From: Podarcis melisellensis
Lineage: Eukaryota
DNA: 64,000 bases
Assembly: GCA_964234715.1 (NCBI GenBank)
Contig: OZ174279.1
Strand: one strand, 5' to 3'
Shown in pieces: positions 1 to 64,000 of this stretch (positions are counted from its first letter, which is position 1; every line of letters starts with the position of its first letter). A model generated the notes under the pieces. It did not search any database, was not told the DNA's origin, and worked only from the letters and a program-made list of their open reading frames with translations. Made by a program: the position numbers and the translations under genes.

Positions 1-1012
1 TCTCAACCCTGAAGGCCTTTTGCTCTTACGTGTGCTTTTGGTGGAGGATGAGTTACTCTTGGTCCTGGAGTGTCCATTGGTGGTTTTGTGGTGAACCACT
101 GGCACAGGGCTATTGGATAGCCAGCCGTCCTTGGCATTCTCCACATGGGTCTTGTCAACAGGTTGCATGTTATAGCTCCCCTTGCTTTTCCCTGAAGCCT
201 GGAGGTGGTTCTCTGCCTTCAGTCTTGCTTCTTGGTCATTCATTTCAGTATCCGGGTGCAAAGAGGCTTTGGAGCTGCACTGCAAGGCATTCTCTTTGTC
301 TGCTCTCCTAGGGGAGTTGGTGGTGAAGCCTGGCTCTCGTGTTTCCTCTGGGAAAGCTTTAAAAGTGTTCTTCTGGGAGCCCACCAGACCGTCTTCACTC
401 ATGTGCATGTTTGTTGCTTTCACAGCATTGTAGCCTCCCAGCAAAGCTCTATTTTGCACCTGGTCTTTGTCATCCTCACCTTTCCTACCCCCCATCTCTT
501 GGTCACTACCAAGGGCTTGGCCTTCCAGACTTTTAGCAGAGTGATGGGAATTGGAAGCAGTGAGGTATCCTTGAGAGGGACTGTCCCTGGGACTTGCAGA
601 ACTTGTTCTAACGCTAGGAAGCTCAGGGAAGTCTCTTCGGACAACTGGACTGCAGTTTTCCCTTCTATCTGTAGATTTCAGATCCACAGCCTGCTTCAGG
701 GCATGGCAAAGTTTGCGCAGAGAGCCATGAGACCCTGATTGCTCTGTGTCCAGGGAAGAAGGGAGCTTTGATTCAGAGCAAGAAGTTCCAAGCTCCTGGT
801 TCTCAGTGCGATACTGGCTGCAGCCAGAGCTACAAGTGGACACATCCATGTTTTCTGCTCCAGGTAACTGCTGTCCCTCACAGCCTGTCTGTACTTCAGT
901 GCAAATGTCGTTTAGGACACGGACGAAGTGCTTCTGATGGTACGTGCACAGTCTGACCATAAATTTTTCCAATGGAGATTTCGGCTGGCCAAGACAATCT
1001 GCAGCGTCCTCA
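1..1012 (-). CDS. LCOR: LCOR alternative terminal exon encoding the PALI1 (C10orf12) region; 5' part only, runs off the window edge
   Basis: Acceptor ctctctccctctctctAG (AG at 1014-1013). Phase 2 matches the donor at 27221 (GG|T GAG). The frame 1011->1 is stop-free for 337 codons (checked triplet by triplet): EDAADCLGQPKSPLEKFMVRLCTYHQKHFVRVLNDICTE...KSNSSSTKSTRKSKRPSGLR. This resembles human PALI1 segments as I recall them (KSPLEKFMVKLCTHHQKQFIRVLNDL; RKSKRASGLR). Confidence 0.93.
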
Positions 1013-22968: not shown

Positions 22969-23938
22969 CTAATCATCCTTTGACTCATTCGCACTCTGTG
23001 CTGCCTCTCCCTGGGGATCTATCTCAAGCTTTACAGAGACATCCTGTCCCTCCGACCGCATTAATTTCATTTTTTTCTTTGGAGGGTTTTTCAAAGTGCC
23101 CAGCCTCTCTTTCACTTTATATTCCAGGGTGCTATGGGGAATCCCATAAATACTCTGAGCTTTGGAGACGCTCATTTTCCCACTCATCACCACAGAGATC
23201 GCTTCTTCCAATATCTCACTGTTGTACTGTCTGTATCTGCCTCTTTTCTTCCGAGGTTGCTTAGAGCCAGGATCTCCCTCTTGATCAGAGGTGGGATATG
23301 GCTGTCCAGAGGTAGATTGCTCAGCATCTGAGCCCCAGGAGTCTGGTCCGGGATCCAGCAAGCTCCTTCTGTTTTGTTTCGGAAGGATAGCCCTTAACTT
23401 TTTACTAAGCGCGCTCTCCGTTTGTGAACCCATTACCAAAGAGCTATAGCTATACTGGTCGCCAGAACGGGACTCCCATGAAAGGTCCATGCCTCGAACT
23501 TGTGGTATCTTTAAATCCACAGGAGTTGAATGGCTCATGTCCTTTTTCCCATCCTGTTTAGTTTGAAGTGCCATTTTTTGAAAGGCTGAATTTTCTGTAA
23601 GAAAAGGAAGGTCACTGATGTTGCTGAGTGCACCGTTTCCCCTGAATTTCATTCTGGTGAAGTTGAATTCGTAGTGTGGTTTTGCCCAAGAAGCCTCCCT
23701 GGATAGTATCATGTGCTGTCCGTGATTCTGCAGCCCAGACGGCCCATGGCTGGCAGCTGTAGCATGCTGGTTTCTGCTCAGCAGTTCTTCGCTTATCTGC
23801 AGTGATCGAGCCAATGGAACTTTGAGAGATGTGGAGTGGCCAGACCCTTCCCTCGTTCCATCCTGCCAACTTCTCGGGGGCACCCCATCACCACTCCGAA
23901 GTCCCTCTGCATGGTGCTGGCTGGGTCTCCCAGGTCGC
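22969..23938 (-). CDS. LCOR: LCOR terminal coding exon of the LCoR isoform: pipsqueak-type HTH domain and basic NLS
   Basis: Acceptor ...ttccttccatccaattAG (23940-23939), phase 2 (GG|G CGA CCT). Encodes RPGRPSQ...PVDLK...KQPRKKRGRYRQYNSEILEEAISVVMSGKMSVSKAQSIYGIPHSTLEYKVKERLGTLKNPPKKKMKLM...ESKDD*, near-identical to the vertebrate LCoR sequence as I recall it. Confidence 0.98.
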
Positions 23939-27220: not shown

Positions 27221-27314
27221 CCATTCCCAGGAGTAGCGGAGCAGCCAGGTGAATGGCTCAAGGAGGCGCTGCCTGCACATGGACTTTTCTTAGTGGACAG
27301 ATCAAGTACTCCGT
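27221..27314 (-). CDS. LCOR: LCOR common coding exon (94 nt) with the second CtBP motif VLDLS; donor for both terminal exons
   Basis: ctctgcAG|AC GGA GTA CTT GAT CTG TCC ... GGG AAT GG|GTaagg encodes (D)GVLDLSTKKSPCAGSASLSHSPGCSATPGNG. Confidence 0.97.
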
Positions 27315-31763: not shown

Positions 31764-32051
31764 CTTGTTCGCTAGGATCCAACTGAGACTTTCTGACAGT
31801 GAGGTCCAAGGGCGAGTCCTGGTCAGCCATGAGAAGTTTGCTGAGCACAGGATTTTGAGCCGTTGCACCCACAGGGGATGAGGCTACCAGAGATGCTTTC
31901 AGCAGGCTTTGGTTCTTTGTGCTATTGGGCGAGCTGGAGTCCTGAGTAGAGCTAGTTTTTGAGGTATATTCAGCAGCAAACTGTCGAATCATCCGCTGCA
32001 TGATCTCACGGGCCACTAGGGGAATGTTGGGGTCAGAGACCCTATGACTGT
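31764..32051 (-). CDS. LCOR: LCOR coding exon (288 nt) with the conventional ATG (32001), LxxLL NR box and PLDLT CtBP motif
   Basis: accatttAG|AC AGT CAT... encodes (D)[31 protein letters not shown]...VLSKLLMADQDSPLDLTVRKSQLDPSEQ, ending G|GTatgc. LSKLL at 31845-31831 and PLDLT at 31812-31798. Confidence 0.98.
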
Positions 32052-32838
32052 CTAAATGGTAAAATAAAATAAAAAAAATAAGAAGGAAGTTTTATGTAGA
32101 ACAAATTTTAAAGCAAGACAACTTCCGATACTGAGGGTTGTGGGGGTTTTTTAAATTTAAAAAAGCTACAATATTTTAACTTGCAAGTGCAAGACAATAA
32201 AAAGGCACAGATCTTACATTGTATCTTCAAAATCTGAAGCAACTTACAGAATTGTGCACCCATTCGCTACAGCTCCCTCTCTTAACTGCATTTAAAAGAG
32301 CCACTATGTCTGCACCAGCTCCTTAAGATCACAATGCCCAATTTTTAACACAGAGAATTTAAAAATGATACAATACATTCACAAGAATGAAATAATTTAT
32401 TCCATGCTGGAATGGGAAGAGGGAGGCAAATTAAGCATGTATTCTTTGTACAGAGGTTTAAAGAATCACCTCCAGTATAACAGCCCTTTGCCAACGTAAG
32501 ACAGAGACCCTATGTATGTCCCCAGATAGAATTCTAGGTCTGCAATAATCTGCCCACCAAAATAAGCTGAGCTAAAGAGAAAGAACTAATAAATTATCAA
32601 TGTGAATCTCATCTTAGTCAAAACTCTCTAGGTAGAATTAGACACGCCATCTTAAATCCACAATTCCTCTTACCTTCCCCACAACCACATGGATATAATA
32701 TTTGCCTATTTACTGGTTCTGAGATAATATCTCTGTGGTACTTTGAACACAAACTCTGCTGTGTAAATGCTATTATTAGTCTCCCCAAAATTCTTCTCTT
32801 CCCACCAGTCCAGCTGCCTGAGAAATCTTGGGCACTAC

Positions 32839-32954
32839 CAGGGCTTTTTTTCAGCTAGAACTCACCAGAACTCAGTTCCAGGTGGGTGTGATTGCCATTG
32901 TAAGAGAAAAAGAGAAGTGTTCATGGCACCTCTTTTTCTAGAAAAAAAGCACAT
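32839..32954. mobile_element. Short hAT-type MITE
   Basis: cagggctttttttcag...ctagaaaaaaagcac termini, with approximate TSD ggcactac / ggcactgc. Confidence 0.6.
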
Positions 32955-33453
32955 GGCACTGCTGCATGGAGACAAAATTTAGAGCACAAACTACCCAGAG
33001 GGTGGTGAGCCTTTTGGGCCCAGTGGGACAGAACTTTATCTTCCCTCAACTCTGTGAGTCAACTTCTAACAGGTGGGTAGGACTGCCCAAATGTCAATCA
33101 TCTAACATCACAGTAACACCAGCGGATTGATACATCAACATTGGGCCACAGGAGTCAGAGCACTCAGGAGATAGTTCAAAAGTCTTGTTCTTCCCTGTAT
33201 GCAGCACTTCACAAATGCCTGAAAACCAGATAACTGTTGGGCCTCTGGGAAGTGCTTGGGAAGCATGTTGGGTGCAAGATATATTTAAAGGTGTCAACCA
33301 GTGTCCTTTTATAGATTATTTGTACAGATAAAAAACCTTGAGATTCTATGGAAATAATACATGGCTATCTCAAAAAAAGTATTTTAAAAAGATCAGTTAG
33401 CCAAGCATGCAAGCCAGTTAGAGTATTGATTTCATTCTTTCATCATGACCAAC

Positions 33454-33586
33454 CTTTTCGATAAAAGACTGCATGGATAAATTCTTCCGCTTGCCTCTCG
33501 AACCGAGTGATTTTCGCTTGCTCTTGTCTAAGCAGAGCTTGGTGCCCAACTTCCAAAGCTGGCTCATCCAGACTGACTAAGTGTTC
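33454..33586 (-). CDS. LCOR: LCOR upstream exon (133 nt), in frame with the main ORF
   Basis: tttttcatAG|GAA CAC ... CGA AAA G|GTtggt encodes [44 protein letters not shown]. Resembles LCORL IECQAENYLNALFRKKD as I recall it. Confidence 0.88.
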
Positions 33587-35397
33587 CTATGAAAAATATT
33601 TAATACAAATGTAAAAATATAAACACCTCTTCTTTTTCATGCTGACTTTAAAAAAAACTGCTCACTGTAAAGACAGTGATACAATTTTATCTGATACAAT
33701 TTGGAATATATGTCAGAATTTGTCAGCCATCTCTCACTGCTTAACATTTAGGGCTGCACATTTATTAAGAAGCAGTTTCCACTAAACTCAGGGCAGCTAC
33801 ATCTGAGTAAATATATTCAGGATCTTAATTCATCTTAAATGATGAATGCACCAACAAATTCACAATATTAAATACAAAACAAGAAAGGCAGAACCATCTT
33901 TGCATTATTTAATAAAATTTACCATATAAGGAAAAGTACTCAAAATTTTCACTTCAAACTGATCAAACACAGGGTTGTTCCAACCAAGGCATTGGGGGGG
34001 GGGGATGAAATGGCAACCTGCCTGGCTGCTGACTGCAACAACTCCACATTATGTGAAGGGGCAGGGGAAAATTGGTTCAAAGAAAGTATGTGGGGGGATT
34101 ATGTTGCCACTGCTGCTTTTACTACTAAGTTCTGTGCCCCAATCTTGAAAATTTTACTACTGTCTCCTGCCCTCCAAAAAAACTACTTCATTTTTATCCT
34201 CCCACCCACCTAAAAGTCCCTTTCCATCAAAACCTCTACCACACTCCTCATAAACTATATTTAGGGAGAGTACATGCAAAGTAGCTAAGGAAACTGATCA
34301 ACACTGAGGTCAAATCACATGCCCAGTTAGGCATGTAGGTAACCTACCCATTTTCTGTCAAGGTTGAATTTAAATCTCCAGCGTCAATATTTTGTGAAAA
34401 AATGACTGTCTGAGAACCCAATAATAAGCACACAATGGAATTCAGTTTGTTAATGCTCTTACCCCTATTTAAGAAATTGGGAACTTTACATCTGAAATAG
34501 ACCTCTTTAAAAGAAATCCCACATCAAGCACAGCAGTTTGTGAAATCACTAATACAGGAAACAGTTACAAAGACCCTACTTTCCATATGCAACCACTAGA
34601 TAGCACTCCTGGCCATGGTTGCCACCTGGCCTTTCCAAGAAGAAACCTGGATTCAAAAGATGTTACCAAGCAGCAAACCAGGTTCTTTAAGAGGAGTGTG
34701 ATTACATTCAACAGGAATTTCCCCCTGTCTCCATTAAATCCCTGTTGATTAATTCTTATCCAAAATAGTCTGTAGGTATTTATGAAGGGTGAGGACAGAT
34801 GCTGCTGGATCCAAAATAAATAAAAAATGTAGTTTGATGTTATCCACATGCAACTCTTTCCAATAGTCTAACCATCTGAACCCAGTGACATTATAAACTA
34901 TGGGAGCACATGTAAGTAGTTCCTGAATGTTATAGATGGAAATGAAGATGCTCAGTAGAGCCTCTCTTGTACTATAGGGAAGAGAATGACAAGATGGTGT
35001 GCTCACCCTAGTTTTGATGTACAGTAACAAAATAAGTGGAGGAGGGAGAAACACACCTCTTTCCATTTGTAGGTTCTCATAAATAATTATTTCACCCCAC
35101 ACAATATATAAAGAACATGAAATTTCTATAAGACAATATGGTTTCTAGTAGATATAAACCTATCAGTGAGTATTAGACACAATACCTAAATGTTATGCTC
35201 ATGTTCAAGAAGCAACATACCCTTCAGAATCAAAGTCTAGAACTGAAACAACAGGAGACACCCATTATCATTCTGTTCTGTTTCTGAGCTTCCTAGTTAT
35301 TATTCACCACTGTTGGAAACAGAATGCTGAGCACAATTGAATGGACAGATCCATTTTTAGGTTCTTAATCCGAAAGGTCGTCAAAATATTGCCCTTC

Positions 35398-35423
35398 AAC
35401 ACACACACACACACACACACACA
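35398..35423. repeat. (CA)n microsatellite
   Basis: Directly visible. Confidence 0.9.
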
Positions 35424-37435
35424 ATGGGAACAAAGAAAAAGAAAGGACTTTAAAATATATGATCAATGCCCATTAAGAGGTTGGGTATGAGGTAAAGTGT
35501 CTAGCATGTCTTAAGAAACACTCTCCCAAGTGCTTCAGGCAACTTATACCTTTAATATCCCACATAACTCCTTGCCAGAATTATGCAAAATAAGCAGCTT
35601 GGCTTAAGCTCTTCAACCTATGCATAATTTATAAAGGCTAAATAATTTTATTTTTTTCTTAGCACAATTTAGTTTACCTTGCTGCCAGGTTTGATTCAAT
35701 TTTTAAAACAGAAGTGCTCACATGAATTTTAAGACCCTTCTTTATTCTGCTTTATCTGAAAATCCATCCTTTCCTTACAGGTAAAAATACCTTGCATAGA
35801 ACAAGGTACCTAATGTTAGTATATATCAGTAAAGAACTCACGGCACTTTTTAAAAAATACTTTCAGTAACACTGGCTTCATTGAATAGGGTTGCTGCTGT
35901 CCACATATGCCAACTGAATATGGTGTTATAGCGGTGAAGGACAAAAATGGATTGAAAAGCAATTGTAAGGAGGGAATAAAGAAGTGGATCAATTACAGTT
36001 AGGCACCAAATGTCTTCAAGGAATGAACCACCCTGTGTGCTGGTGTATAGCACACTGTCAAACATAGGCTAATAACACAAAACACAATAAGCTCAACAGT
36101 TCCAAAACATCAACCACCCTCAGACTAAGGCTAGGTAGGGTATTATGTAGCTCCAGCAAACCTTGGTACAAAAAAGCAAAGCAAAGGATATCTCATGTAT
36201 CCAGATCACAGCAAGGGCTTACACCACTCTTGACCTATAGAACCACAATACATAGGACCACAAGAAAGAACTTGGCAATGTGAAACTTTAGTGAAAATGT
36301 ACTGTACACAAACCCAAGGATAACAGGGTGCTGATAAAAAAAGTGCTACGGAAAACAAAGAAAAATAGAACATTTGTGAGTTCTGACTTTCCAAAGGAAT
36401 TCTACAGTATTTATTCATGTCACACTTTCTTCCACAAGGCAATTCAACAGTGCATAGATAGGGTTCCCAAGTGCTTTCCCAATCAGGCACTGGCCAGAAC
36501 CAATCCTACTTTAGCTTCAGCAAGGCTGTTGCAACATGTGCCCTCAAGCCATGCCCTAGGATCTGCATTAGGATTCTGGACACAAATGCCAAACAGAAAT
36601 TTCAACTCTTGAGCTGAAACACAATGCAACACAAAGCACAAGCACTGGTAACCAAGGGAGGGAGAGGGCAGTTTAACACCAAAGTATATCTTAACATACA
36701 ACCAGAACAGGCATGGGCCAATGATCAGCACCAAGATCAAGAAATGTTTATACCCAGGTAAGTCCCCAATAGAAGCTACTAAAGGAATGCCAAGCACAAA
36801 CAAGGCCTTGGATTTCAAGCACTCTGCTCACTAGAAGTGCTTGATCTAACAACTCTATACTATCCTTTCTTGCATAATAAGCACAACCAGAAAATACACA
36901 GCAGAATAATCATTACTAAAGTAATCTATGACTGCCTAGTGTAAACCACTGAGAAGTCTTTTGTTGTAGTAGACTGAAAATAAATGTTAAATAAATAAAA
37001 AATAACTTCAGTGCAATATGCTCCTCTGGAAAGATGCATACAGTCTCTAATATTAAATTTTCAAACATCTAAACCCCACCTCAATTATGGAGAATATAAG
37101 GTGACCACAATGACAAGAGGAGCATGTATGGGTCATGGATTCCTCAGCAAGACTGATGGAATGGGGATACAGATTGAGCCTTTCTTGTGCACTGACCAAT
37201 CCACTCCTTTGCAATGAACACACTATATATTTGGTACCTACTTTTCTTTATAAAATAATCTGAAACCAGAGTATAATACAATAAAATGAATTAAAAATCA
37301 AGCAATCAATGAACAATAAAACATATATAGTTCAATAGCTATTTAGAAAGTGAAGTGACACAGATTCAATCCAAAGCCCAGGTGGTTAAGTAGGTCTTCA
37401 ACTAGTGCTGAAAGCTAACAAGAGTTGCCACCAAC

Positions 37436-37579
37436 CAGTGTTTTCTTCTAGAAAAAAGGTGCCAGTACTCACCATGAAGTTGTTACATTAAGTGCCACAT
37501 TTTTAAGCAGTACTTTTCTTCTAGGGAAAAAAATGTGCTGGTACTACGTAACCTTGAGTATCCCTAGAAAAAAGCACTG
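37436..37579. mobile_element. hAT-type MITE inserted in a decayed minus-strand L2 fragment (about 37370-37630)
   Basis: TIR cagtgttttcttcta / tagaaaaaagcactg. Approximate TSD ccaccaac / ctgccaac. Confidence 0.65.
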
Positions 37580-38800
37580 CTGCCAACTGTAAATGAAGGG
37601 TAAGGGAGTTCCACCATCAGGGCACCATGCATCCCAGGTGCAAACCATCTCATACTACTCTTAGCATGCATCTTTTTTGAACTGCAATCTACGATGAAAT
37701 ACCCACTAAGGCAAGGATGCTTCCCTATTTGGTACCACACAAACAGCTAAGATAGCTTGGAGAAGAAGCAATCCTTTGCACACTACTTGAAACCACCAGA
37801 ACTGAGAGAGCTGAAACAGTTAATCCATTTACTTGACACTATTGGAGGTGGTTTAAGAGCAGGAACACCTCTCCTGCGCACCACCACAGACTTCTCACAT
37901 ATCATGTGTATGCAACAGTGCCCATAAAGGGATAACTGAGGCACTAACTGCCTTGCTGCAATAGCCACCAGAATGGGGTTTAACATCTTCCCAATGAGTA
38001 GTCACTCCTCATCAGCCATGATGATCTGGCAGGCCCCTCATTCCCACCTCACCTAGAAGTGCCAACTTCTAGAATATAGCCAAATAATTGTTTTTATTTA
38101 TAATCCACCAACTCATTAAAAAAAACTAAGGTGGTGTAGTTAAATCATTAAAACACCTTAAAATCTTAGGCTCATAAAATACAGAATGAATGGCCAACAG
38201 TGAAAATACAGAGGAAGATGGAAAAAGCGAGAGATGACCTGGGGATATGAGCATTCACTGACTCATTCCATCCACAATGGTCATTGAACTGTCAACCACT
38301 CCAACTACTTTCCCCATCCTCTGTGGGACTTCACAGTTGGGGACACCAATAACTGCACTTGGAAACTATGTTATGGGGCAATGAACTCATGAACAAACAA
38401 AATATTGCACCCAAATTTTGTGGTCCACTTGTATGATTAGTGGAACAGGGCCAACAAGACAAAGCTCAGGAGTTGAGGTTGGGATGTTGCTCTCGCCCCA
38501 CTGTCTCAAATAAACTGCCTTTCTGCTACTTCTATCCTTTACCATCTGAAACTGTTGCCAGCAAGAAATCTATTCAGCATATTGCACCTTGTACAAAAAC
38601 ATCAGTGGCACCAGCATCATCTAAGAATGAGCTTATGCAAACCATACCCATATACTCCCAGGAACAGCCTAAATATCCTAGAGTCTTAAGTGTAATACAC
38701 AGAAGCTACACCTAATATGCCATTCTACAAGGCATGGATGACCAACTGGCTAGACTGCTGGTGCAGGCAAACTGCCAATGGCATGTAAGAACTCTGCTAA

Positions 38801-39277
38801 ACTATCTGCACTGGCTGTCCATTTGCTACTGGGACCAGGTTCCAGGCTCTTGTGGTAATATATAAAACCGTGAACAACTTGAGTCCAGGATACCTTAAGG
38901 ACCACCTGAGCTCTAATATCCAAACTCAATCATTAAGATAATCCAGAGGAGCAATTAGTTGTTCCCTGAGTTACAGAGGTCCAACTGGCTTCAACCAGAG
39001 GTTGGGCATTTAGTGTTGCCAGGCCCATGCTGTAGAATATTCTTCCACCACAGATTCATGAGGTATCCTCGCTACTGACTTTCGGGTGTCTCATGAAGAA
39101 CTTTTTATGCTGACAGGTTTATGAAGTTATTTAAACTTTCCTGATTAGCCAGTCATTTTAACAATTACTATTGGGGGATTTTTAGTTTTCATTGCATGTT
39201 ATGTTTTATTGTATATACTGTTGTACATCACCTTGATATTTTATGAGTTGGCAGTATATAAATATTTCTATAAATAA
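38801..39277 (+). mobile_element. L2 LINE 3' fragment
   Basis: Decayed LHWL...YKTVNNLSPGYLKDHL-type sequence, then gttgggcatttagtgttgcc and an AT-rich 3' end. Confidence 0.65.
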
Positions 39278-39626
39278 AAATGATAAAAGCAATGCAAAGC
39301 AACACCATTATTGCACAGCATAGCCATCTGCAATGCAGATACTTTGGTTACAATCCTAACACCCTATCACTGATCTATGACAGAATCTCTGTGAAACAGG
39401 CATCATCATTGCCTCTTGTCTAAGAGAAGGGAAGAGTACAAAAAAGGTTCCACATATGCAGTAAGGAAACTTCTGCTAAGCTTGGACACTTGTGGATCAA
39501 AATGAGCACTCCACACAGATCCCTATCCAGCTTCTTAAAAGTGACATGGGACTGATCTGCTTCCCTCAGTGGAGGGCATAACTGTACAAAGGGTCATGGA
39601 GTACAGACCACAAGTACATGCATGCC

Positions 39627-40324
39627 ATCAAAGTTTCTTAACACCTACCAAAATAGCTAAAATGTATAAGACAAAAACAAATCTGTGCTGGAGGTGTGGT
39701 AAAACAGAGGGGACACTTATACATGTGTGGTGGACCAGTGAAAAAAATCAAAAGCTTCTGGAACACAGTGTATGATAAGCTTAACAAAATGTTTAAGTAT
39801 AACTTTATGAAAAATACAGAAGCTTTTCTACTAGGGATAACGGACACAGGCATAGCAAGAGATGATCAGAAAATATTCCCTGATGCCACAAGAGCGGCAA
39901 GGATCCTAATTGCCAAAAACTGGAAAAAAGAAACTGTGCCAACAAAAAAGGAATGGCAAGATAAACTGTTAGAGTATATTGAACTTGCTAGATTAACAGA
40001 GGCAATTAGAGATCACACTAGACAAGTTTCAAAAAGCATGGGGGGAAATGCAGAGAATACTTCACAAAACAGTGCCCTAAAATACATACCTGGACTTGTT
40101 TCGATTAATGTCTGCAGGAGACGTTGTGGATATGTAAGTTATAATTAGAAAAATCTTAATAATTATTCATAAAGGACACAATTTATAAGAAGTAAATAAG
40201 GAGGCCAGATACAGGATAAAGGAAGTCTTTTATTTGGTTGTTTGTATTGTTGTATGTTATGTTCACTGTGGGGTGGGGGTGGGGGGTTGTGTTATGTTGT
40301 AAATAAAATTCCAATTTAAAAAAA
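39627..40324 (+). mobile_element. L1-clade LINE 3' fragment (ORF2 C-terminal Cys/His zinc-binding region, frameshifted)
   Basis: FLTPTKIAKMYKTKTNLCWRCGKTEGTLIHVWWT then a frameshift to KIKSFWNTVYDKLNKMF...EAFLLGI...AARILIAKNWKKETVPTKKEWQDKL. AATAAA and an A-run near 40302-40324. Confidence 0.85.
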
Positions 40325-40451
40325 TGAAGTTTCCCCATAAAATATGTAATATGAATATAGATAATAAAAAGGAATTAAGGCCAAATAGAAATTTTTGAGA
40401 GTTTTGATATTTTGTATCTAACAAAGAGAAAGAATGATACCTTGATGTTAG

Positions 40452-41745
40452 TATTTATTGATTTATCCCCTGCCTTTTTCTCTGACGGAACTCAAGGCAG
40501 CTTACAGATAAAAGTAAGAACTGCTAAAAACATAACAATCATTAAAAAGATGAAACATCAGTAGAATTAAAACTATATACATATATAGAATCTGTTAAAA
40601 TCGTATCAATAATTGCAACACAGCACCAGCTCTTTCATTAAAACAGTCAGTTCACAAAAACATGTTGAAGCAAGGAACTCTTCACCTGCAGGCAGAAATA
40701 CAACAAGGAGTGAGCCAATGTAGCTTCTCTAAGGAGGGAATTCCAAACTCTGGGAGCAGCCACTGAGAAGGCTCCCTACCAAGTGCGCCCGTGAGGGTGG
40801 CAGAACTGAGAGAAGAGCCTCCTCTGAAGTTCTCATATGAACCCAGGAAGGTTCATATGAGGGAATACGGTCTTTCAGATAGCTTGGACCTAGGCCCTGT
40901 AGGGCTATAGGTTGTAACCAGCACTTTGAATTGTGCCTGGAAACAGACTGGTAGCCAGCGGAGCTGTTATAGTAAAGGGAGACATATGCTTCCTATAACC
41001 AACCCTGGGCCCCAATCTGGCTGCAGCTCTTTGAGCCAGTTGAAGTTTGCAAAGTGTAGTGTGTGTTACAGGCATCCAAATGGGGTGTAACTAAGGAGTA
41101 TATCACTGTGGCCAGTGATCAAGGGGTACAGTTGGCACACAATCTTTAACTGTGCAAATGCACTTCTTGCCCCTACAGAGACCTGGGCATCCAGGCCCAG
41201 GGCTAATTTCAAGAGCACACCGAAACTGCAAACCTGTGTCTTCAAGGAAGTGTTACCCCCATTCAGCACAGCCTGAATCCCTGTTCCCTGTTCCGCCTTC
41301 CGAATGACCACTACTGTCTTGTTTGGATTCAGTTTCAATTTGTTCACTGTCACCCAGTCCATTACTGATTACAGGCACCATTTTAGAACCAAGAGAGCTT
41401 TCTTGGATTTAGGTGGAAAGGAGAAATAGAGCTGGGTGTCATCAGCATACTAGTGACACCGAGCCCCCAAACTCTAGAAACCTCTCCCAGCAGTTTCATG
41501 TAAATGTTAAATAACAGTATAGAACCCTAAGGAACCCTGCAGGTCAACAGCCAAGACATCAAACAGAAGTCTCCCAGCATCACCTTCTGTGTTTGCTGCC
41601 CCTCCAGGAAGGGACCCACTGTTAAAGAGTGCCTCCAAGTCCCATTCCAGCAAGGCAGATCTAATCAGTCTCCTCCACTCAAACTGAGGTGCCACCACGC
41701 ACTCTAGAACCTTGCCCAAAAATGGGATAAAGCAGATTGGAAAAG
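40452..41745 (-). mobile_element. Decayed L2 LINE with RT remnants
   Basis: Minus-strand YADDTQLY at about 41450-41427, MDWVTVNKLKLNPNKT and PFLGKVLECVVA. 3' terminus gtaagctgccttgag...ggggataaat near 40505-40460. Confidence 0.85.
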
Positions 41746-42447
41746 TTTTCTTTTTAAAAACAAAAAACAAAAGTCATATTATATTTAATGTTACATTTAC
41801 ACCGACAGTTTACCTTAAAATAAGTGTTCTGTGCTCATCTAAAATACAAAACTAATTATAGAGCTCCTACCAAATATATTTCTATTTTTTAAACTCTTTT
41901 ATGTATATTCTGGGGGAAAACACCTTTCTTATCAGGACATTCATCCCTCCAGATTTTCCTCAAATGTCTTATTATCTAACAGTGATATCTAATGCAGTGC
42001 TCACACAAGAGGGCTTCTCCTTTCTCTCCTCCCCTTGCAACCTCTTATAAACCTCCAATCTTTTTCAGAGGGGTTTGAGACACTCTCCAGAGCAAATACT
42101 GGGGGCACACAGAGGCAGTAGGGGGAGAAAATAAATCAGAAATCCTATTCTGCAAGCAGATGAATATATTGGATGTTGTCCTAAAGTTATGCTTGTTAGA
42201 GCTTTTGTCTATAAGTGCCTTGTTGAATTGTCTCTCCATCACCTGAGAGAAAATATATTTAACAAAGCTCAAAAGAAAATTGCAATCATAACTTAGGATG
42301 CCAAGTGCATAGTAACACTAGCCATGTAACATATCAACCCAGCTTAAATTTATTTTATCTAGCATTCATTTTTCACAGGACAAAAACAATCTGCAACTTT
42401 AGAACTGAGCTAAAAGACCAAATGTTCAATACCTTCAGCATGACTGA

Positions 42448-42797
42448 GTAAAGATAAAGGTAAAGGGACCCCTGACCGTTAGGTGCACTCGCGGATGACT
42501 CTGGGGTTACAGCGCTCATCTTGCTTTACTGGCCGAGGGAGCCGGCGTACAGCTTCCGGGTCATGTGGCCAGGATGACTAAGCCGCTTCTGGCAAACCAG
42601 AGTAGCGCATGGAAACGCCATTTACCTTCCCACCAGAGTGGTACCTATTTATCTACTTGCACGTGCTTTCGAACTGCTACGTTGGCAGGAGCAAGGACCG
42701 AGCAACGGGAGCTCACCCCATCGCGGGGATTCGAGCCACTGCCCTTCTGATCGGCAAGCCCTAGGCTTTGCGGTTTACACCACAGCACCACCCACAG
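42448..42797 (-). mobile_element. Sauria SINE
   Basis: Close match along its length to the copy at 30898-31250. Confidence 0.9.
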
Positions 42798-42863
42798 GGA
42801 CACAGCAAATTCATATCCATCTTCCTGAAAACAGGAAGATATTCACTGCATAAGGACATAAAT

Positions 42864-43137
42864 CAGGGGTCTCCAAACTTTATGAACCCCAGGACCATTT
42901 CACAGAAGAACAGGCAATGCCCAGGACCCTCCAAAAACAGCCAAGCACACCTACATTGTCACAGAGACACACGCACACCAAAACAAACAAAATGCAGGCC
43001 AAAGAAAAAGCAGGCAACTTTCCCCCAAACAAAACAATTATCAGTTTTTTAAAAATTAAATATTAGGCAGGGCAGCGGGTCTTGGCAGGCACCAAGGAGG
43101 TGTCTGAGGGCACCACAGTCCCCACACTTTGGACCCT
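42864..43137. mobile_element. Degenerate hAT-type MITE
   Basis: caggggtctccaaactt start and cactttggaccct end. Confidence 0.45.
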
Positions 43138-43538
43138 ACATGCATCAGCTTAAGCGCCTGCCTAATGCTATAATAGCCATATGTGGGTTCAGAATGGAAA
43201 CAAGAATGAATTAGGTACTTGATTGCATTAGGAATTTGCAGTGAAGTGAGAAGTGCCATAAGCATAGTGCTGTTCCTACACTTAAAATTAGGGTCACTAA
43301 CATCTGCTTTCCAAGCAGTCCACATTCTGATCTGCCTAGATTACAAAATACTTTCTTCTCCCCACTTTAATAATGATACAAAAAAGGACAGTGGTGGTGT
43401 GTACAGTGTGCAGATACTTCCAAAAACAGCAAGGCACTTGTCGCTCCTCTAGACATTGGACTCCGCAAGTAACTGCAGTATCTCCTGAGTTTACTGACAA
43501 AGGTGCATAGCTTATTTAAAGATTAGTAGAAAAGCTTG

Positions 43539-43619
43539 GGAGGACAGAGGTGCCTGGCGTTCTCTGGTCCATGGGGTCACGAAGAGTCGGACACGACTAA
43601 ACGACTAAACAACAACAAC
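43539..43619 (+). mobile_element. 5'-truncated RTE-BovB LINE insertion
   Basis: gcctggcgttctctggtccatggggtcacgaagagtcggacacgactaaacgact(aac)n. 11-bp TSD AGAAAAGCTTG at 43528-43538 and 43620-43630. Confidence 0.88.
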
Positions 43620-44227
43620 AGAAAAGCTTGTGAATGTAGTACACAGTCCACTATGCCAAGAAAAGAAGGTGCAAAGCTAATAATATCTATTGGTAATTGT
43701 GAATTAATGTGTGCAGAGAATGAAACAGCTGCCATCAGACTGAACTCAACCCACATAGATACTTATACAAGAACCACAACCAAGCAATGAAGTTAGATTC
43801 TGGCAGATATAGCTTTCTGTTGTTCTTATGGCACAACTTCATTGCAGTGAAGCAACAGATCTCCACAGAGTGCACATAGGAAAAATGACTCTATATTGCA
43901 ATCACAGACAAAGTGACATGCTAGGCAGCTCCTATAGACTGAACCTCACAGTTGGCAACCACTGAAGGAATTGAGTACCATTTGCCTTCACATACAACAT
44001 AGAATTTAAGCACCCCTTCACAATACAGATTACTCTAAATAGGAAATGAGTAAAAGGAAAAGACCTCCACTGCCCAATTTTCTTTTTCTTTTTCCTTTGT
44101 TCAATGTCCTTTTACTTTAAGGAAGCAAATGTGGGTTCCTCTACCCATTACTATTTTTGCCAAACTAAAGCCAGATAAAAACCCAAATCCTTTTTTTAAA
44201 AAAGACTGAGGATATTTGCTTTGTTAC

Positions 44228-44307
44228 CTTCACTTTCTCTCGTCTCAAACAGCAGAAAAGACAATTTTCATCAAAAGACCAATCAGACACACCTTCAGGC
44301 TCAAAGT
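44228..44307 (-). CDS. LCOR: LCOR upstream exon (80 nt), in frame
   Basis: cttcttcttcttcacAG|AC TTT GAG ... GTG AAG|GTaaca encodes (D)[26 protein letters not shown]. Resembles LCORL EPEELTDWSMDEKCSFC as I recall it. Confidence 0.9.
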
Positions 44308-44717
44308 CTGTGAAGAAGAAGAAGCCGTTACTTCATATCTATAAAGACCACAACTTGCTTATGGCTAAAGCTCATTCCCAATTCACTACATGATTTAGAA
44401 GACACTTGGTGAAATTCAGAAAACATAAATTTGAATTCTGTCATGCTTTTAATTCCACAATGCTACAAAAGTATAATATTTGCCTACACACAAAGCTGAT
44501 TTTCCTAAGCAACACCAAAACCACTGCCAGTTATACAGAGATGAAGGCATGCTCATTAGTAATTTTAGCCAATATGAAACTAACTGTGAGCATTGCCTGG
44601 GGGGAGGGAAAAAGCACAAATCACCAAGGTAACATACATTTTCTAGAGGCAGAGCAGAGGTTGATTTTGTCATTAGAAATGCAGATCAAGGCAAAAAAAG
44701 GGGGGTAGATGTAATAC

Positions 44718-44783
44718 CTTTAAACAAACTCAGATCTTTTAATAATTCAGGTCCAAACAGCCCTTCTAGAATACTTTCAAATC
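44718..44783 (-). CDS. LCOR: LCOR upstream exon (66 nt), in frame
   Basis: tttctttgcttttAG|GA TTT GAA ... TTT AAA G|GTatta encodes (G)[21 protein letters not shown]. Resembles LCORL [22 protein letters not shown] as I recall it. Confidence 0.9.
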
Positions 44784-46534
44784 CTAAAAGCAAAGAAAGA
44801 ATAGTTAGCTTTCTCTATAATATATGTTACTGTCAGAATATTGAAAATGGTTCTTTATTCATCTGTTCCTTGGATGCTTTTATGCAATGAACTCAAGGCC
44901 TCCTGGTCAATCATGACAAATAAATTGGGGGAGGAGAAATGAGCCTTTATGTATATTATCTTTAAGAGTTACACTAAATAACTATATTAATAATTAAGAA
45001 GTATATGGTAGAAAAAATGGAAATGTTTGTGTATCAATGGAATTAATTTTTTCCACAAAAATCTACCACTCTTTTTAGGTTATAAAAAATATGTATTTTT
45101 GCCTCATCTTATAGATCACATTTTAAAGCAAAGATTTTGAACTTCAAGCCTTAGTATTTCTTAGAAAAAGGAAAGCCACTAAGGTGCAAAGGAAACAGCA
45201 AAATACAGTGTGCATGCATTGTGTATGAGCTTGTTTATTACAGAGAAGATTTTCTATGCCTTTTTAAAGAGTGCAGTCTGTTTGTGTTCTAAAAGATTCT
45301 ACCACCACCACCCAATTATTGCCACTATTTGTAAATGTAAATTCAGTGTTAATCTAAATCATGGCTTGCAGCTAAAGAGATAGCCAAACTAGCTACCCGT
45401 TACCCATACCATAAGGAAAGGGGCACATTCTAGAAAATATACCAGGGACATTTTAGGAGACATTTGTTAATTCTGCCAGAGTTTGCTCTGAAAAATAAGA
45501 CACATTTTTGGGATTTTGTAATACAATTTCCACATATACTTAACAGTACTGTACTTGTGTAATTTCTACTTTTACTACAATATTTGAAGTCAAGAAAGAA
45601 AGCCTTGAAAAAAAGCAATGCAACAGCTATTTTTGGAGCCACAATAGAGTGCAATATAGGGCAATTTTGCTTTAGAGATGCATGACTCTCTCTCTCTCCA
45701 ACAAGCTTCACAACCCAGTGGTTGTACTTTCATTTATAAAGTATACACAAGAACCATATTGCAAATTTGGATGTGTTACAGTCATTAGAGATCAGATGTA
45801 AAACTTAAAACACACTGCTAACAGAAGCATCTCTTGATCAATGTTGATCAGCTAACAACAAATCTATCAGGGTGAAGCACAAACACAGAAGAGACAAAAA
45901 TACAGAGAAAAGAAGGGGGAAGTGTAATAAATATACATGTGTGTAATGCAATGAGCACACAATAAGCCAAAATACAATGGATGCAGCTGGACATCATTAT
46001 CTTACAGTTACTCTGCTAACTTTTAAAAGTTACAAAGCAAAACTGACAAAAATATGTCACAGTCAAGTCTGGGGAAACATCATTACTATTACTAAGAAAA
46101 AGTTAAAATTCTAAAAGATTATCTGTATATTATGCACATGTTTGCAATAGAGAACCGTTTGCTTTATTATTAGAAAAAATAAAAGCCAGAGAAGAATCTG
46201 TGAAATGCAGAAATGGCAAGCAGAGAGACGTCCCTTCCTGCAAATGGCAACTATTTATTTATTTTTAAAGAAAAAAGTGTTGGGGCACTCTTGCACATAT
46301 GCATGTAACATGTAGATGTTATATAAATATTTGTAACTCAATAAACAAACAAGTCATGGCCTGTTTCTCCACCTGCTCTTGCCTCATGCCTTTGTAACTT
46401 GGTGAGTGAGGTGGGGTGGCAAAACAAAGCATTGTTAAGTGAGGCTATAGAGTATGGACATAATATGAAAGCATAGCCCGAAAAGAAACCATGGTCAGTC
46501 TCTTGGGTTGGGTCTGCAAGTTCAGCAAACCATA

Positions 46535-48130: not shown

Positions 48131-49339
48131 GCACTCCCCTCCCCTCCAAAATGTATACATGAAATCAGCAGCTTTTGCTAGGTTTTTAATTTCTCAAGAA
48201 TATAAACTGGAAAAACTGGGTGGGGTAGACAAAAAGCTTAGATACAAAAGCATGTAAAGTGTAGTTAGTATCTAAATGTTACTACTTAAGATTACAGTCA
48301 GTTTAGTTCTGTGCAAGGCTGAATGCTTTAAAAAACACACCCATACCTCTTACAATATCTGTAATAGTAATTACCAATGATTCATGTCCCATGGAGTTTG
48401 CTATGAATGCAATAGAAAATTCACAATGTCTGCCAAGTGGGCTACACAGCCTGGACAGTATAGAATCCTACCTTGTTCACTGTTCTCACCAATGGTAATG
48501 CCACTTGATTTTTATTAATATTAAATATTAGATTTAACAGTTGCATAGCAACAGCAGAAGAGCTTATATGTAATACTTGTCACCAAAAATGCCAAATAAG
48601 GCAAGAATGAATATATTCAAAAATTATTTTAAAGGACTTGGCATAATGCAGCAGCAAACAACATGCAGCAAGAAGCAACACAGAAATGAAGGGCTATGAC
48701 CTGCCTGTTACTTTCAATCACTTAAGAGTCCATAAAAAGCATGCGCTTGTATCGGCAACAAATACCCTGAAAAAGATCTTGAAAAATGAGATCCTGGCTA
48801 GTTTTTACTAGGATTTGTCTCAATCACTCTTAGGAGATAGGAGAGAACATTCCTTTCTCCAATGATATTTTCCTTCCTTCCCTATTTGACAGATTATGTT
48901 TTCTCCATATTTCAAAGGAAAAGAATTAACATGGCTGTCTGTTAAATTCCTGTATTCATACCTTCATCATTCACATGCATGTTTGATCATTTACAGCTGC
49001 TGAAGAGAAGCAGTTGTACAACAGTGACAAGCATAAGAGCACAGGAATTGTAAGAGACTCAGGATGTTTCAATTTTGATATTTTTCACAACATTTCACAA
49101 CTGATTTTACGTATGAAGACTTGGCAATAAGAGAAGGCCATTTACAATGAAAAACAGGCTTGCTAATGTTTTTATTCTACAAAAATGAGTAAGGGTACCT
49201 GGATTTTCTAAAAGTTTCCTCTACAACAAATTAGCTATTATTTACTACAGAAGGACCGCTGATTGATTATTGTAAGAGTTGCTTGAAAGGAAACTGTATC
49301 TTGATGCATGCATATACACACATTTTCTTGCACTTTGGA

Positions 49340-62400: not shown

Positions 62401-64000
62401 TATATAGACAAAGTTCAAAGCACAATGCAACATAACCATATATTCTTAGCACATGTCTGAGAAACCACAAAAGATGCAAAAGAAAGGGGTTTCCTTCTTT
62501 AGTCAAAGTAGATCCCAATGAGAAGAAAACATTTCAGTATCTGTATATGCTGCTTAACCAGGGCCATCTTAGGTCAGAGGACAGTGTTAGAAGGTATTTT
62601 GTACACAGGTAGAGATAGCTGAATAGAAGAGTTATATGTATGTCGTGTATGAAAAGCATATTCTATTTTTATAACACATGAAAGCTGGGCTCAATTATTT
62701 TCTCAGTTATCACTTATAGATGTATGAGCTTCACATAGACATTTTGATTTTGATAACAGAATGCTGGTCTCTGTAGCTAGAACATGTGCAGGCCTCTAAA
62801 TGTTGTGCATTTTGTTGAAGATTTGTTGTTTTAACATTTTCCACTGCTCTGCAAGTCCCGAGTTACCTGCATATTTGATGCTGAACAACCAGAAAAGCCT
62901 ACAAACAGAGGTCAATGAAAACAGTCTCTCTATTCACGATCAAAGAAATAAGCATGACTGTTTTACATCTTGGGAAGAATAACCATCAGGCTATTCAAGG
63001 TTTGTAAATGTATGCATCTATAGTAATACCAATTCCATATTTTAACTTTTATACAGTATCTAGGACTGTAAAATGAAAACTAGATGTAATACTGAACAAC
63101 CTATAATTGCACACCCACTCACAATGTTTCCAAGTTCAGAGGTCCTTGATTTACAATCTACAATGCTACTATTATGTAGACCATACATAATGATGAATTT
63201 TAGTTTCCCAGGATGTTCATGATTCAGGCTTAGAGCCAAATCCAGCAGGTTATAGCATGTACAAAAAAGGAAACATATGGGCACATTGAAGGTTTACGGG
63301 GTCATTTTTCCTTCACTATTGAGGGAAGTGTGTGAAGTAGGTTCAAGGGTATATTAGTGGAGCTCCTATGAAAGGGAGAAGGTTGAACAAAATATTGGCA
63401 TGTACACTATTGACAAGAAACAAAACATACATTATTAATGCACTTTCATTAAGATTCAGAAGAAAATCGTGATTTTATTTTTCTGACAGATTATTAAAAT
63501 TTACCAGAATAGTGACAGAACATCTTTCTTTGTCTTCACTGTGCTTCTAATTTTAAGTATCATGCTTCAGCTTCACAGAATTACATCTTTTGGAATCTGG
63601 ACCAGGTAAGTGTGAGTGTCACTATGATGCTTGCATGACGGTCTGGTGCATATAAATTCTAAAGTAGCACTTATAGGGACATTCAGATATTAGGTAATCA
63701 AGGTATCTTGTGAAATACTTTTTATCAATACCAAAAGCAACCATAAAAATAAAGCTTGTTGACTTTGTTCCCTGTGTTAGAAAGTAGCCCTAGGTATCAA
63801 GCCTCTATCTGAAACTTCCATTATTCCACCAGAGCATTCCAAATTAATGAGATTCATATCAAACACTGAAAAACACACTCCTAATTTCTAAAACATGCAA
63901 ATCAAAAAACTACAACTCAGCGCTACGCTATTAGTATGTGATCCTCCCCAACAGTCAGTCATATCACTTCACAGATGTGTAGCTTTCAACATGAAGATGA

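What the first reader, a model, noticed from the sequence alone, without database searches (positions are those of the whole stretch)
32002..44783. Hidden in-frame N-terminal extension of LCOR/PALI1 (about 110 aa) across exons usually treated as 5' UTR
Seen: exons of 66, 80 and 133 nt plus the first 50 nt of the ATG exon splice with compatible phases (1-1, 1-0, 0-1). They give 329 nt with no stop and no in-frame Met: (G)[114 protein letters not shown]. None of these small exons is in the ORF track. Knowledge (from memory): canonical human LCoR (433 aa) starts at MQRMI, whereas the paralogue LCORL has a collinear N-terminal block ([11 protein letters not shown]...DWSMDEKCSFC...QAENYLNALFRKKD...[12 protein letters not shown]). 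Inference: both isoforms here carry an extra conserved N-terminal domain that initiates at an AUG or near-cognate codon beyond position 64000. Some non-mammalian annotations may already include it.
Basis: partly seen in the sequence, partly recalled or inferred. Interest (0 to 1): 0.72.

Follow-up and report, generated by a model that had tools for sequence, protein, structure and literature searches.

The report
LCOR conserved N-terminal coding exons
Three small exons upstream of the textbook LCOR start codon are real, strongly conserved protein-coding sequence, but this longer N-terminus is already in public gene models from sharks to mammals, so it is not a new discovery.

Summary
On the minus strand, exons of 66, 80 and 133 nt plus the 50 nt before the MQRMI ATG have AG/GT borders. 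They join in phases 1-1, 1-0 and 0-1 and read open with no in-frame Met.

The exons match annotated LCOR proteins of 562-580 aa in shark, bichir, frogs, turtle, alligator, birds, platypus, marsupial, sheep and apes. PALI1-type isoforms of about 1700 aa also carry the region. dN/dS against alligator, bird and turtle orthologous DNA is 0.12-0.19, like the canonical coding sequence (0.06-0.17). Introns 150 nt away are 55-71% identical (87% just downstream of exon A), against 84-97% for the exons. A profile search finds the domain in LCORL and in amphioxus.

In orthologues the initiator is an AUG in a 97-nt exon 1 ending in G|GT. It was not found in the window and most likely lies beyond position 64000.

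"Hidden" is overstated. RefSeq and UniProt models already include the extension, although the LCoR papers read here number the protein from MQRMI.

The domain has no Pfam family and no structural match. The model is helical, with conserved CX4C and CX2C motifs, and its function is unknown.

The parts
44718..44783 (-). Exon A (66 nt), codes (G)[21 protein letters not shown] plus the first base of the next codon. Enters in phase 1 and leaves in phase 1.
   Evidence: Sequence read. tblastn to LCOR orthologues is 75-95% identical. RNA reads cover these bins and not the intron.
44228..44307 (-). Exon B (80 nt), codes (D)[26 protein letters not shown]. It holds the chordate-invariant W and the CxxC motif.
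   Evidence: Sequence read. It is 79-93% identical to orthologues from frog and mammals to catshark (90% to catshark). dN/dS is 0.03. RNA reads cover it.
33454..33586 (-). Exon C (133 nt), codes [16 protein letters not shown]...[13 protein letters not shown] plus one base. It has a variable linker followed by a conserved helix.
   Evidence: Sequence read. It aligns without gaps to most orthologues (one 1-aa gap against the marsupial) at 61-84% identity. dN/dS is 0.12-0.36.
32002..32051 (-). The first 50 nt of exon D, upstream of the canonical ATG. They code (D)[16 protein letters not shown] in frame with MQRMI.
   Evidence: Sequence read. [11 protein letters not shown] is nearly invariant in 40 vertebrate sequences.
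31764..32001 (-). The rest of exon D, from the canonical start MQRMI. It contains the NR box LSKLL and the CtBP motif PLDLTVR.
27221..27314 (-). Exon E, codes (D)GVLDLSTKK...GNG and holds the second CtBP motif. It is the last exon shared by LCOR and PALI1.
22969..23938 (-). The LCOR-specific terminal exon with the HTH_psq domain and the stop codon.
   Evidence: Pfam PF05225, E = 3e-15..
1..1012 (-). Start of the large PALI1-specific exon (acceptor ctctag|T). It stays open to the edge of the window.
   Evidence: tblastn to the deer PALI1-type isoform P0250, residues 267-600, 47% identity, E = 1e-65. Sequence and translation.

Best explanation
Exons A, B and C and the first 50 nt of exon D are ordinary coding exons of the long, ancestral N-terminus of LCOR. 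In transcripts that begin at the CpG-island exon 1, translation starts at an AUG there. Exon 1 was not found in the window and most likely lies beyond position 64000. It contributes about 32 codons plus the G of the split Gly codon.

Translation then runs through A, B, C and D. It adds about 142 aa in front of MQRMI on both the HTH isoform (LCOR) and the PALI1 isoform, because both share exons A to E.

Exons A-C have no in-frame AUG. Transcripts that begin at other, non-coding first exons would therefore read the same exons as 5' leader and start at MQRMI. Promoter choice would then decide whether the domain is made. This last step is inferred, not shown.

The domain is a helical module with conserved CX4C (exon 1) and CX2C (exon B) motifs. 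It is present in LCOR, LCORL and the amphioxus homologue. A zinc-stabilised or partner-binding role is my inference only.
For: - Anatomy, phases and open frame.
- Collinear matches of every exon to annotated LCOR proteins of 562-580 aa, with no frame breaks.
- Purifying selection: for the extension, dN/dS is 0.19, 0.12 and 0.13 against alligator, passerine and tortoise DNA, and 0-0.05 among those three. Fisher p ranges from 1e-4 to 6e-10. The canonical exons give 0.06-0.17.
- Third-position excess of substitutions, and exon identity of 84-97% against 55-71% for most flanking intron stretches.
- Alignment of 40 vertebrate sequences: mean column identity 77%, with 42 invariant columns.
- Profile search of 1.84 billion proteins: 258 hits, mostly starting at residue 1 of proteins of 1577-2157 aa. 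Every cluster looked up that carries a clear name is LCOR or LCORL, and two are amphioxus.
- Deer isoform X2 carries the N-terminal domain together with DUF4553.
- Passerine exon 1: gaagATGG context, 97 nt, donor G|gtgagg, GC 67%.
- RNA reads of a bulk RNA-seq run fall on exons A and B only. Their one difference from the window is synonymous.
- Out-of-frame ATGs in exons B and C would act as upstream ORFs if these exons were mere leader.
Against: - Exon 1 and its AUG were not seen for this genome, so the start is inferred from orthologues.
- RNA support here is only 5 reads, and no joint reached the listing threshold.
- This lineage carries more amino-acid changes in the extension (10-12) than alligator, bird and turtle differ from one another (0-2). 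These include Cys to Phe at the otherwise nearly invariant DCEPE position.
- Models of 433 aa starting at MQRMI are also annotated in many mammals, so the short form may be the major product in some taxa.
Confidence: 0.9

Rival explanations
1. The exons are coding in principle, but in this species most transcripts start at non-coding first exons. The main protein would then begin at MQRMI, and the long form would be a minor isoform.
For: - There is no in-frame AUG in exons A-C.
- The MQRMI AUG has A at position -3.
- Models of 433 aa and various alternative first exons are annotated in mammals and turtles.
- The LCoR papers read here number the protein from MQRMI, for example LSKLL at aa 53.
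Against: - Purifying selection on the extension is as strong as on the canonical coding sequence, which implies that it is translated often enough to matter.
- Three out-of-frame ATGs in exons B and C would hinder scanning to MQRMI.
- Most listed non-mammalian models are of the long form.
Confidence: 0.25
2. The exons are untranslated 5' leader. Their conservation would reflect RNA-level or regulatory constraint, and the open frame would be incidental or a longest-ORF artefact of gene predictors.
For: - Some annotated N-termini are clearly predictor artefacts. Examples are the turtle alternative exon, whose frame is broken in the bird and in this window, and the GC-rich first exon read through in a human TrEMBL entry.
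Against: - dN/dS is 0.03-0.36 with a third-position excess.
- The frame is kept from amphioxus to mammals.
- The other two frames carry stops.
- The paralogue LCORL has the same block at its annotated N-terminus.
Confidence: 0.03
3. The extension starts at a near-cognate (non-AUG) codon within or just upstream of exon A, rather than at an AUG in a separate exon 1.
For: - There is no AUG in the 329 nt.
- Exon 1 was not found in the window.
Against: - Orthologues from amphioxus to mammals all begin with an AUG exon, MA..C, that is itself highly conserved: C5, C10 and W24 are invariant.
- That AUG has a strong Kozak context.
- The acceptor in front of exon A is a good polypyrimidine-AG site, so exon A looks like an internal exon.
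Confidence: 0.04

Closest known systems
Annotated long LCOR isoforms. Examples: XP_074089338.1 (Macrotis lagotis, 574 aa), XP_027816054.2 (Ovis aries, 575 aa), XP_017659376.1 (Lepidothrix coronata, 575 aa).
   Same: The exon structure is the same and the sequence is collinear. This window's exons A, B, C and the 50-nt stretch are 70-95% identical to them at the protein level and meet the canonical MQRMI sequence in the same frame.
   Different: - This window lacks exon 1, which lies outside it.
- This lineage has about 10 private substitutions, including Cys to Phe in DCEPE, Gly to Glu in GPGLL and Pro to His before RVSDP.
LCORL (Mlr1) N-terminus
   Same: A collinear N-terminal block runs from the MA..C....C start through [14 protein letters not shown].FC and [8 protein letters not shown].E.M. 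It is 48-60% identical to bird LCOR and lies at residue 1 of both short and PALI2-type long isoforms.
   Different: LCORL is a paralogue at a different locus. In LCORL this block belongs to the accepted protein, whereas canonical LCoR numbering (433 aa) omits it.
Canonical LCoR (433 aa) and PALI1, as used in the papers read here
   Same: It is the same gene, with the same NR box, CtBP motifs, HTH_psq domain and PALI1 exon.
   Different: The papers read number the protein from MQRMI and do not describe the upstream 142 aa. A review states that PALI1 and PALI2 share no extensive homology beyond the CtBP and PRC2 regions (PMC8864842). The N-terminal block contradicts that statement for the long-form models.

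Membership tests
LCOR (ligand-dependent corepressor, Mblk-1/E93 family) | C-terminal HTH_psq DNA-binding domain | tested here: met
   PF05225, E = 3.4e-15, on the terminal exon 23938..22969.
LCOR (ligand-dependent corepressor, Mblk-1/E93 family) | NR box LSKLL and CtBP motifs PLDLTVR and VLDLS in the shared N-terminal exons | tested here: met
   All three motifs are present in exons D and E. Their positions agree with PMC5562849.
LCOR (ligand-dependent corepressor, Mblk-1/E93 family) | Orthology to LCOR rather than LCORL | tested here: met
   The terminal exon is 92-95% identical to bird, turtle and alligator LCOR. The extension exons are 82-100% identical to sauropsid LCOR, whereas shark and smelt LCORL are 48-60% identical to bird LCOR over the same region.
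LCOR/LCORL N-terminal domain (no Pfam family) | Collinear block: exon 1 (MA..C....C..ER.G.R..LD.WR..L..CV), then [9 protein letters not shown], DW....C..C, QAE.FLNAV and DPNIPLVA.E | tested here: met
   Exons A, B, C and the 50-nt stretch match the block. The exon 1 part lies outside the window and was not testable. The exon peptides have no Pfam hit.
PALI1 isoform of LCOR | Large alternative exon that ends in DUF4553 (PF15090) and is spliced after exon E | tested here: inconclusive
   The start of the exon is present at 1012..1 and is 47% identical to deer P0250 residues 267-600. The DUF4553 part lies beyond the window edge. DUF4553 was confirmed in the orthologue P0250, which also carries the N-terminal domain.

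The most novel reading that the evidence does not exclude
The roughly 142-aa N-terminus is an ancient, chordate-wide module of the LCOR/LCORL family, found from amphioxus to mammals. It is helical, with conserved CX4C and CX2C motifs, has no Pfam family and no structural relative. Published LCoR and PALI1 constructs that start at MQRMI lack it.

Alternative first exons would switch exons A-C between coding sequence and 5' leader. The gene would then make proteoforms with and without this module, and these could differ in activity or partners.
Probability: 0.4. Interest if true: 0.5.

Novelty: already known. Interest (0 to 1): 0.25.

Why it matters
For genome annotation this is routine. The correct model for this locus is the long form, and public pipelines already predict it in related species.

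The point worth passing on concerns the papers read here. They number LCoR from MQRMI and do not mention a block that is at least as conserved as the rest of the protein: exon B is 90% identical between this animal and a catshark, against 57-61% for the canonical exons. Anyone who studies LCOR or PALI1 function, maps variants to its "5' UTR", or designs knock-outs or cDNAs should take the long N-terminus into account. Its function is open.

Tried and rejected
- **Pfam on each exon peptide.** Nothing above threshold; the CSPP1_C and YceG scores are noise.
- **Search for exon 1 in the window.** Regex and lenient tblastn found nothing.
- **Turtle-type alternative 5' exon.** A recognisable copy lies about 4.1 kb upstream of exon A, but it has indels and stops and its donor reads CT instead of GT. 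I rejected it as a start exon here.
- **AlphaFold2 of residues 1-145 with 40 sequences.** pLDDT 47, unusable. Residues 1-92 with 82 sequences gave pLDDT 73, about 90 over residues 20-50, and four helices.
- **Fold searches.** Foldseek against PDB gave no match. VIA-align wide gave a best Z of 4.0 on generic long helices, which is not meaningful.
- **RNA reads.** Only 5 reads were laid, so no joints or loose ends were listed. The two Logan contigs are intronic and uninformative.
- **Earlier findings of the scan.** None for this place or these words.
- **Literature.** No paper in the held library describes an LCOR N-terminal extension.
- **Sheep locus.** The look-up failed because the gene is not on record.
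- **Spliced protein of this window.** It was never joined and sent to a search. All searches used single exons by reference, or database orthologues.
- **Human records.** No human contig was fetched. Two human protein records that a cluster listing returned were only displayed.
Full report
**1. Observation**

| Exon | Coordinates (minus strand) | Length | Borders |
|---|---|---|---|
| A | 44783..44718 | 66 nt | ttttag\|GA...AAAG\|gtatta |
| B | 44307..44228 | 80 nt | cacag\|AC...AAG\|gtaaca |
| C | 33586..33454 | 133 nt | catag\|GAA...AAAAG\|gttggt |
| D | starts at 32051 | — | atttag\|AC |

- The ATG of MQRMI is at 32001..31999, so exactly 50 nt precede it.
- The other two frames of each exon contain stops.
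- The chance that 109 random codons of this composition stay open is about 8e-4.

**2. The rest of the locus**

tblastn with orthologues and direct reading give the remaining exons.

- Exon D ends at 31764. It holds the NR box LSKLL and the CtBP motif PLDLTVR.
- Exon E is 27314..27221 and holds VLDLS.
- The LCOR terminal exon is 23938..22969. It carries an HTH_psq domain (PF05225, E = 3e-15).
- The start of the large PALI1-specific exon is at 1012..1 and is open to the window edge. It is 47% identical to residues 267-600 of a deer PALI1-type isoform.

**3. Is the extension coding?**

Three lines of evidence say yes.

*Collinear orthologues.*
- A word search with the terminal exon returned many LCOR models of 562-580 aa, about 145 aa longer than the 433-aa form. 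They come from catshark, bichir, sturgeon, frogs, caecilian, turtle, alligator, birds, platypus and a marsupial.
- Each of the four extension pieces aligns to them in order. The alignments are gapless apart from one 1-aa gap in exon C against the marsupial.
- Exon B is 90% identical to catshark, while the canonical exons D and F are 61% and 57% identical. The extension is thus at least as conserved as the rest of the protein.

*Substitution pattern.* I fetched orthologous loci from alligator (L001), a passerine (L002) and a tortoise (L003). I compared codons exon by exon, leaving out the split codons.

| Comparison | Extension dN/dS | Canonical exons dN/dS |
|---|---|---|
| Window vs alligator | 0.19 | 0.07 |
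| Window vs passerine | 0.12 | 0.06-0.09 |
| Window vs tortoise | 0.13 | 0.09-0.15 |
| Among the three | 0-0.05 | 0.07-0.17 |

- The excess of synonymous change is significant, with Fisher p from 1e-4 to 6e-10.
- Substitutions concentrate at third codon positions.
- Exon identity is 84-97%. Intron stretches of 150 nt next to the exons are 55-71% identical, except the stretch downstream of exon A at 87%.

*Depth of conservation.*
- An alignment of 40 vertebrate N-termini has 77% mean column identity and 42 invariant columns.
- A profile built from it, run against 1.84 billion representative proteins, found 258 hits.
- Most start at residue 1 of proteins of 1577-2157 aa. Those looked up are named as lcor or lcorl long isoforms. 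A deer isoform of 1700 aa has both the N-terminal domain and DUF4553.
- The profile also hits the amphioxus homologue, in a 572-aa HTH_psq isoform and a 2054-aa isoform. Its first 95 residues or so keep C5, C10, W24, C31, W64, C70 and C73.

**4. The start**

- The 329 nt have no AUG.
- In orthologues the protein begins with a separate exon 1 of pattern MA..C....C..ERRGFR.ELDSWRHKLIHCV.
- In the passerine locus this exon is 97 nt in a GC-rich (67%) region. Its context is gaagATGG and its donor is G|gtgagg.
- The passerine model starts at this exon, 31 kb upstream of exon A. The alligator and tortoise models start about 24 kb upstream of their exon A.
- The window offers only 19 kb upstream of exon A. 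Neither regex nor lenient tblastn finds exon 1 there.
The codon is an ordinary AUG, and the whole extension is about 142 aa.

**5. RNA in this organism**

- One search found RNA runs labelled with the same organism as the best partial holders of the stretch.
- Laying two raw-read runs and two contig runs on 44150-44850 gave only 5 reads, all on the bins of exon A and exon B and none in the intron between them.
- Most of these reads run on into sequence not in the stretch, as spliced reads would.
- The one consistent difference, 44288 C>G on the plus strand, changes GTG to GTC, which is Val to Val.
- This is weak but consistent support. The joints were too few to be listed.

**6. Not hidden**

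- Cluster listings show long LCOR models in sheep (XP_027816054.2, 575 aa, with the same exon 1 as marsupial and platypus), whales, camel, pig and apes. A human TrEMBL entry carries exons A-C read in frame behind other first exons.
- Ruminant PALI1-type isoforms also carry the extension.
- Models of 433 aa that start at MQRMI coexist with them.
- The papers I could read number LCoR from MQRMI, with LSKLL at aa 53 (PMC5562849). They do not mention the block (PMC8864842, PMC5343783).
- No paper in the held library describes an LCOR N-terminal extension.
- The feature is therefore known to annotation pipelines but is not discussed in the papers I could read.

**7. How it may work**

*Shown:* the exons are under protein-level constraint and lie in frame with both isoforms.

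*Inferred:*
- Exons A-C lack an in-frame AUG. Transcripts from the exon 1 promoter make the long protein, while transcripts from AUG-less alternative first exons would start at MQRMI, whose AUG has A at position -3.
- Three out-of-frame ATGs in exons B and C would be upstream ORFs in that case. This argues that the leader use is not the primary one.

*Structure:*
- AlphaFold2 on residues 1-145 failed, with pLDDT 47.
- On residues 1-92, with 82 sequences including LCORL and amphioxus, it gave pLDDT 73. This is about 90 over residues 20-50, with helices at 8-32, 34-42, 44-53 and 71-88.
- Foldseek found nothing in PDB. The wide structural search gave only a best Z of 4.0 on generic helices.
- The conserved CX4C and CX2C motifs suggest a zinc site or a partner-binding helical module. 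This is untested.

**8. Lineage note**

This genome has 10-12 amino-acid differences from alligator, bird and turtle in the extension, while those three differ from one another by 0-2. One of them is Cys to Phe in DCEPE. That position is nearly invariant in vertebrates, but it is Phe in amphioxus and varies in a few fish. It is probably not a metal ligand.

**9. Procedure notes**

- The spliced protein of this window was never joined and sent to a search. Searches used single exons by reference or database orthologues.
- No human contig was fetched or compared. Two human protein records returned by a cluster listing were displayed only.

**10. Verdict**

The novelty is low because public gene models already carry the extension. 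The residual interest lies in the uncharacterised, very conserved N-terminal module.

Noticed in passing
window about 48822..48930 (minus strand); L001:24002-24106, L002:29658-29760, L003:23209-23313: Sauropsid LCOR loci share a conserved alternative 5' exon of about 105 nt, 2.3-2.5 kb upstream of exon A. Turtle RefSeq models read it as coding (..EKDKIGGKRNVLFKLLRAVTMERKNTIK(R)|FESIL). The frame is broken in the passerine. The copy in this window, about 4.1 kb upstream of exon A, has indels and stops, and its donor reads CT instead of GT. It is probably a non-coding leader exon or a conserved element, and the ORF in turtle models is likely a longest-ORF artefact.
   Followed up: partly
P0358 and P0367 (Branchiostoma): Amphioxus has one LCOR/LCORL-like gene with the same N-terminal domain. 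It has two isoforms: 572 aa with two HTH_psq stretches, and 2054 aa with no Pfam hit and no DUF4553. A short-plus-very-long isoform layout therefore exists outside vertebrates, although PALI proteins are described as vertebrate-specific (PMC8864842). I did not test whether the long isoform is PALI-like.
   Followed up: partly
window 44303-44305 (minus strand; first full codon of exon B): The nearly invariant Cys of DCEPE is Phe here (TGT to TTT). This is one of about 10 private substitutions in the extension of this lineage. Amphioxus also has Phe at this position.
   Followed up: partly
window 44288: Three of three RNA reads of run X24 show C>G on the plus strand. This changes GTG to GTC, a synonymous Val change in exon B. 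It is a polymorphism or a strain difference.
   Followed up: no
window 39569..40148 (+) and 41066..41362 (-): Open frames in the B-C intron look, from memory, like fragments of LINE-type retrotransposons (a Cys/His-rich tail CWRCGK..H.WW, and a ..NKLKLNPNKT.. segment). They were not examined further and are not part of the finding.
   Followed up: no
P0009 (Phocoena sinus, Ensembl-derived): This is a mammalian model in which exon C is joined directly to exon E, skipping the MQRMI exon D, and the frame is kept because both junctions are phase 1. If real, it would give a protein with the N-terminal domain but without the NR box and the first CtBP motif.
   Followed up: no
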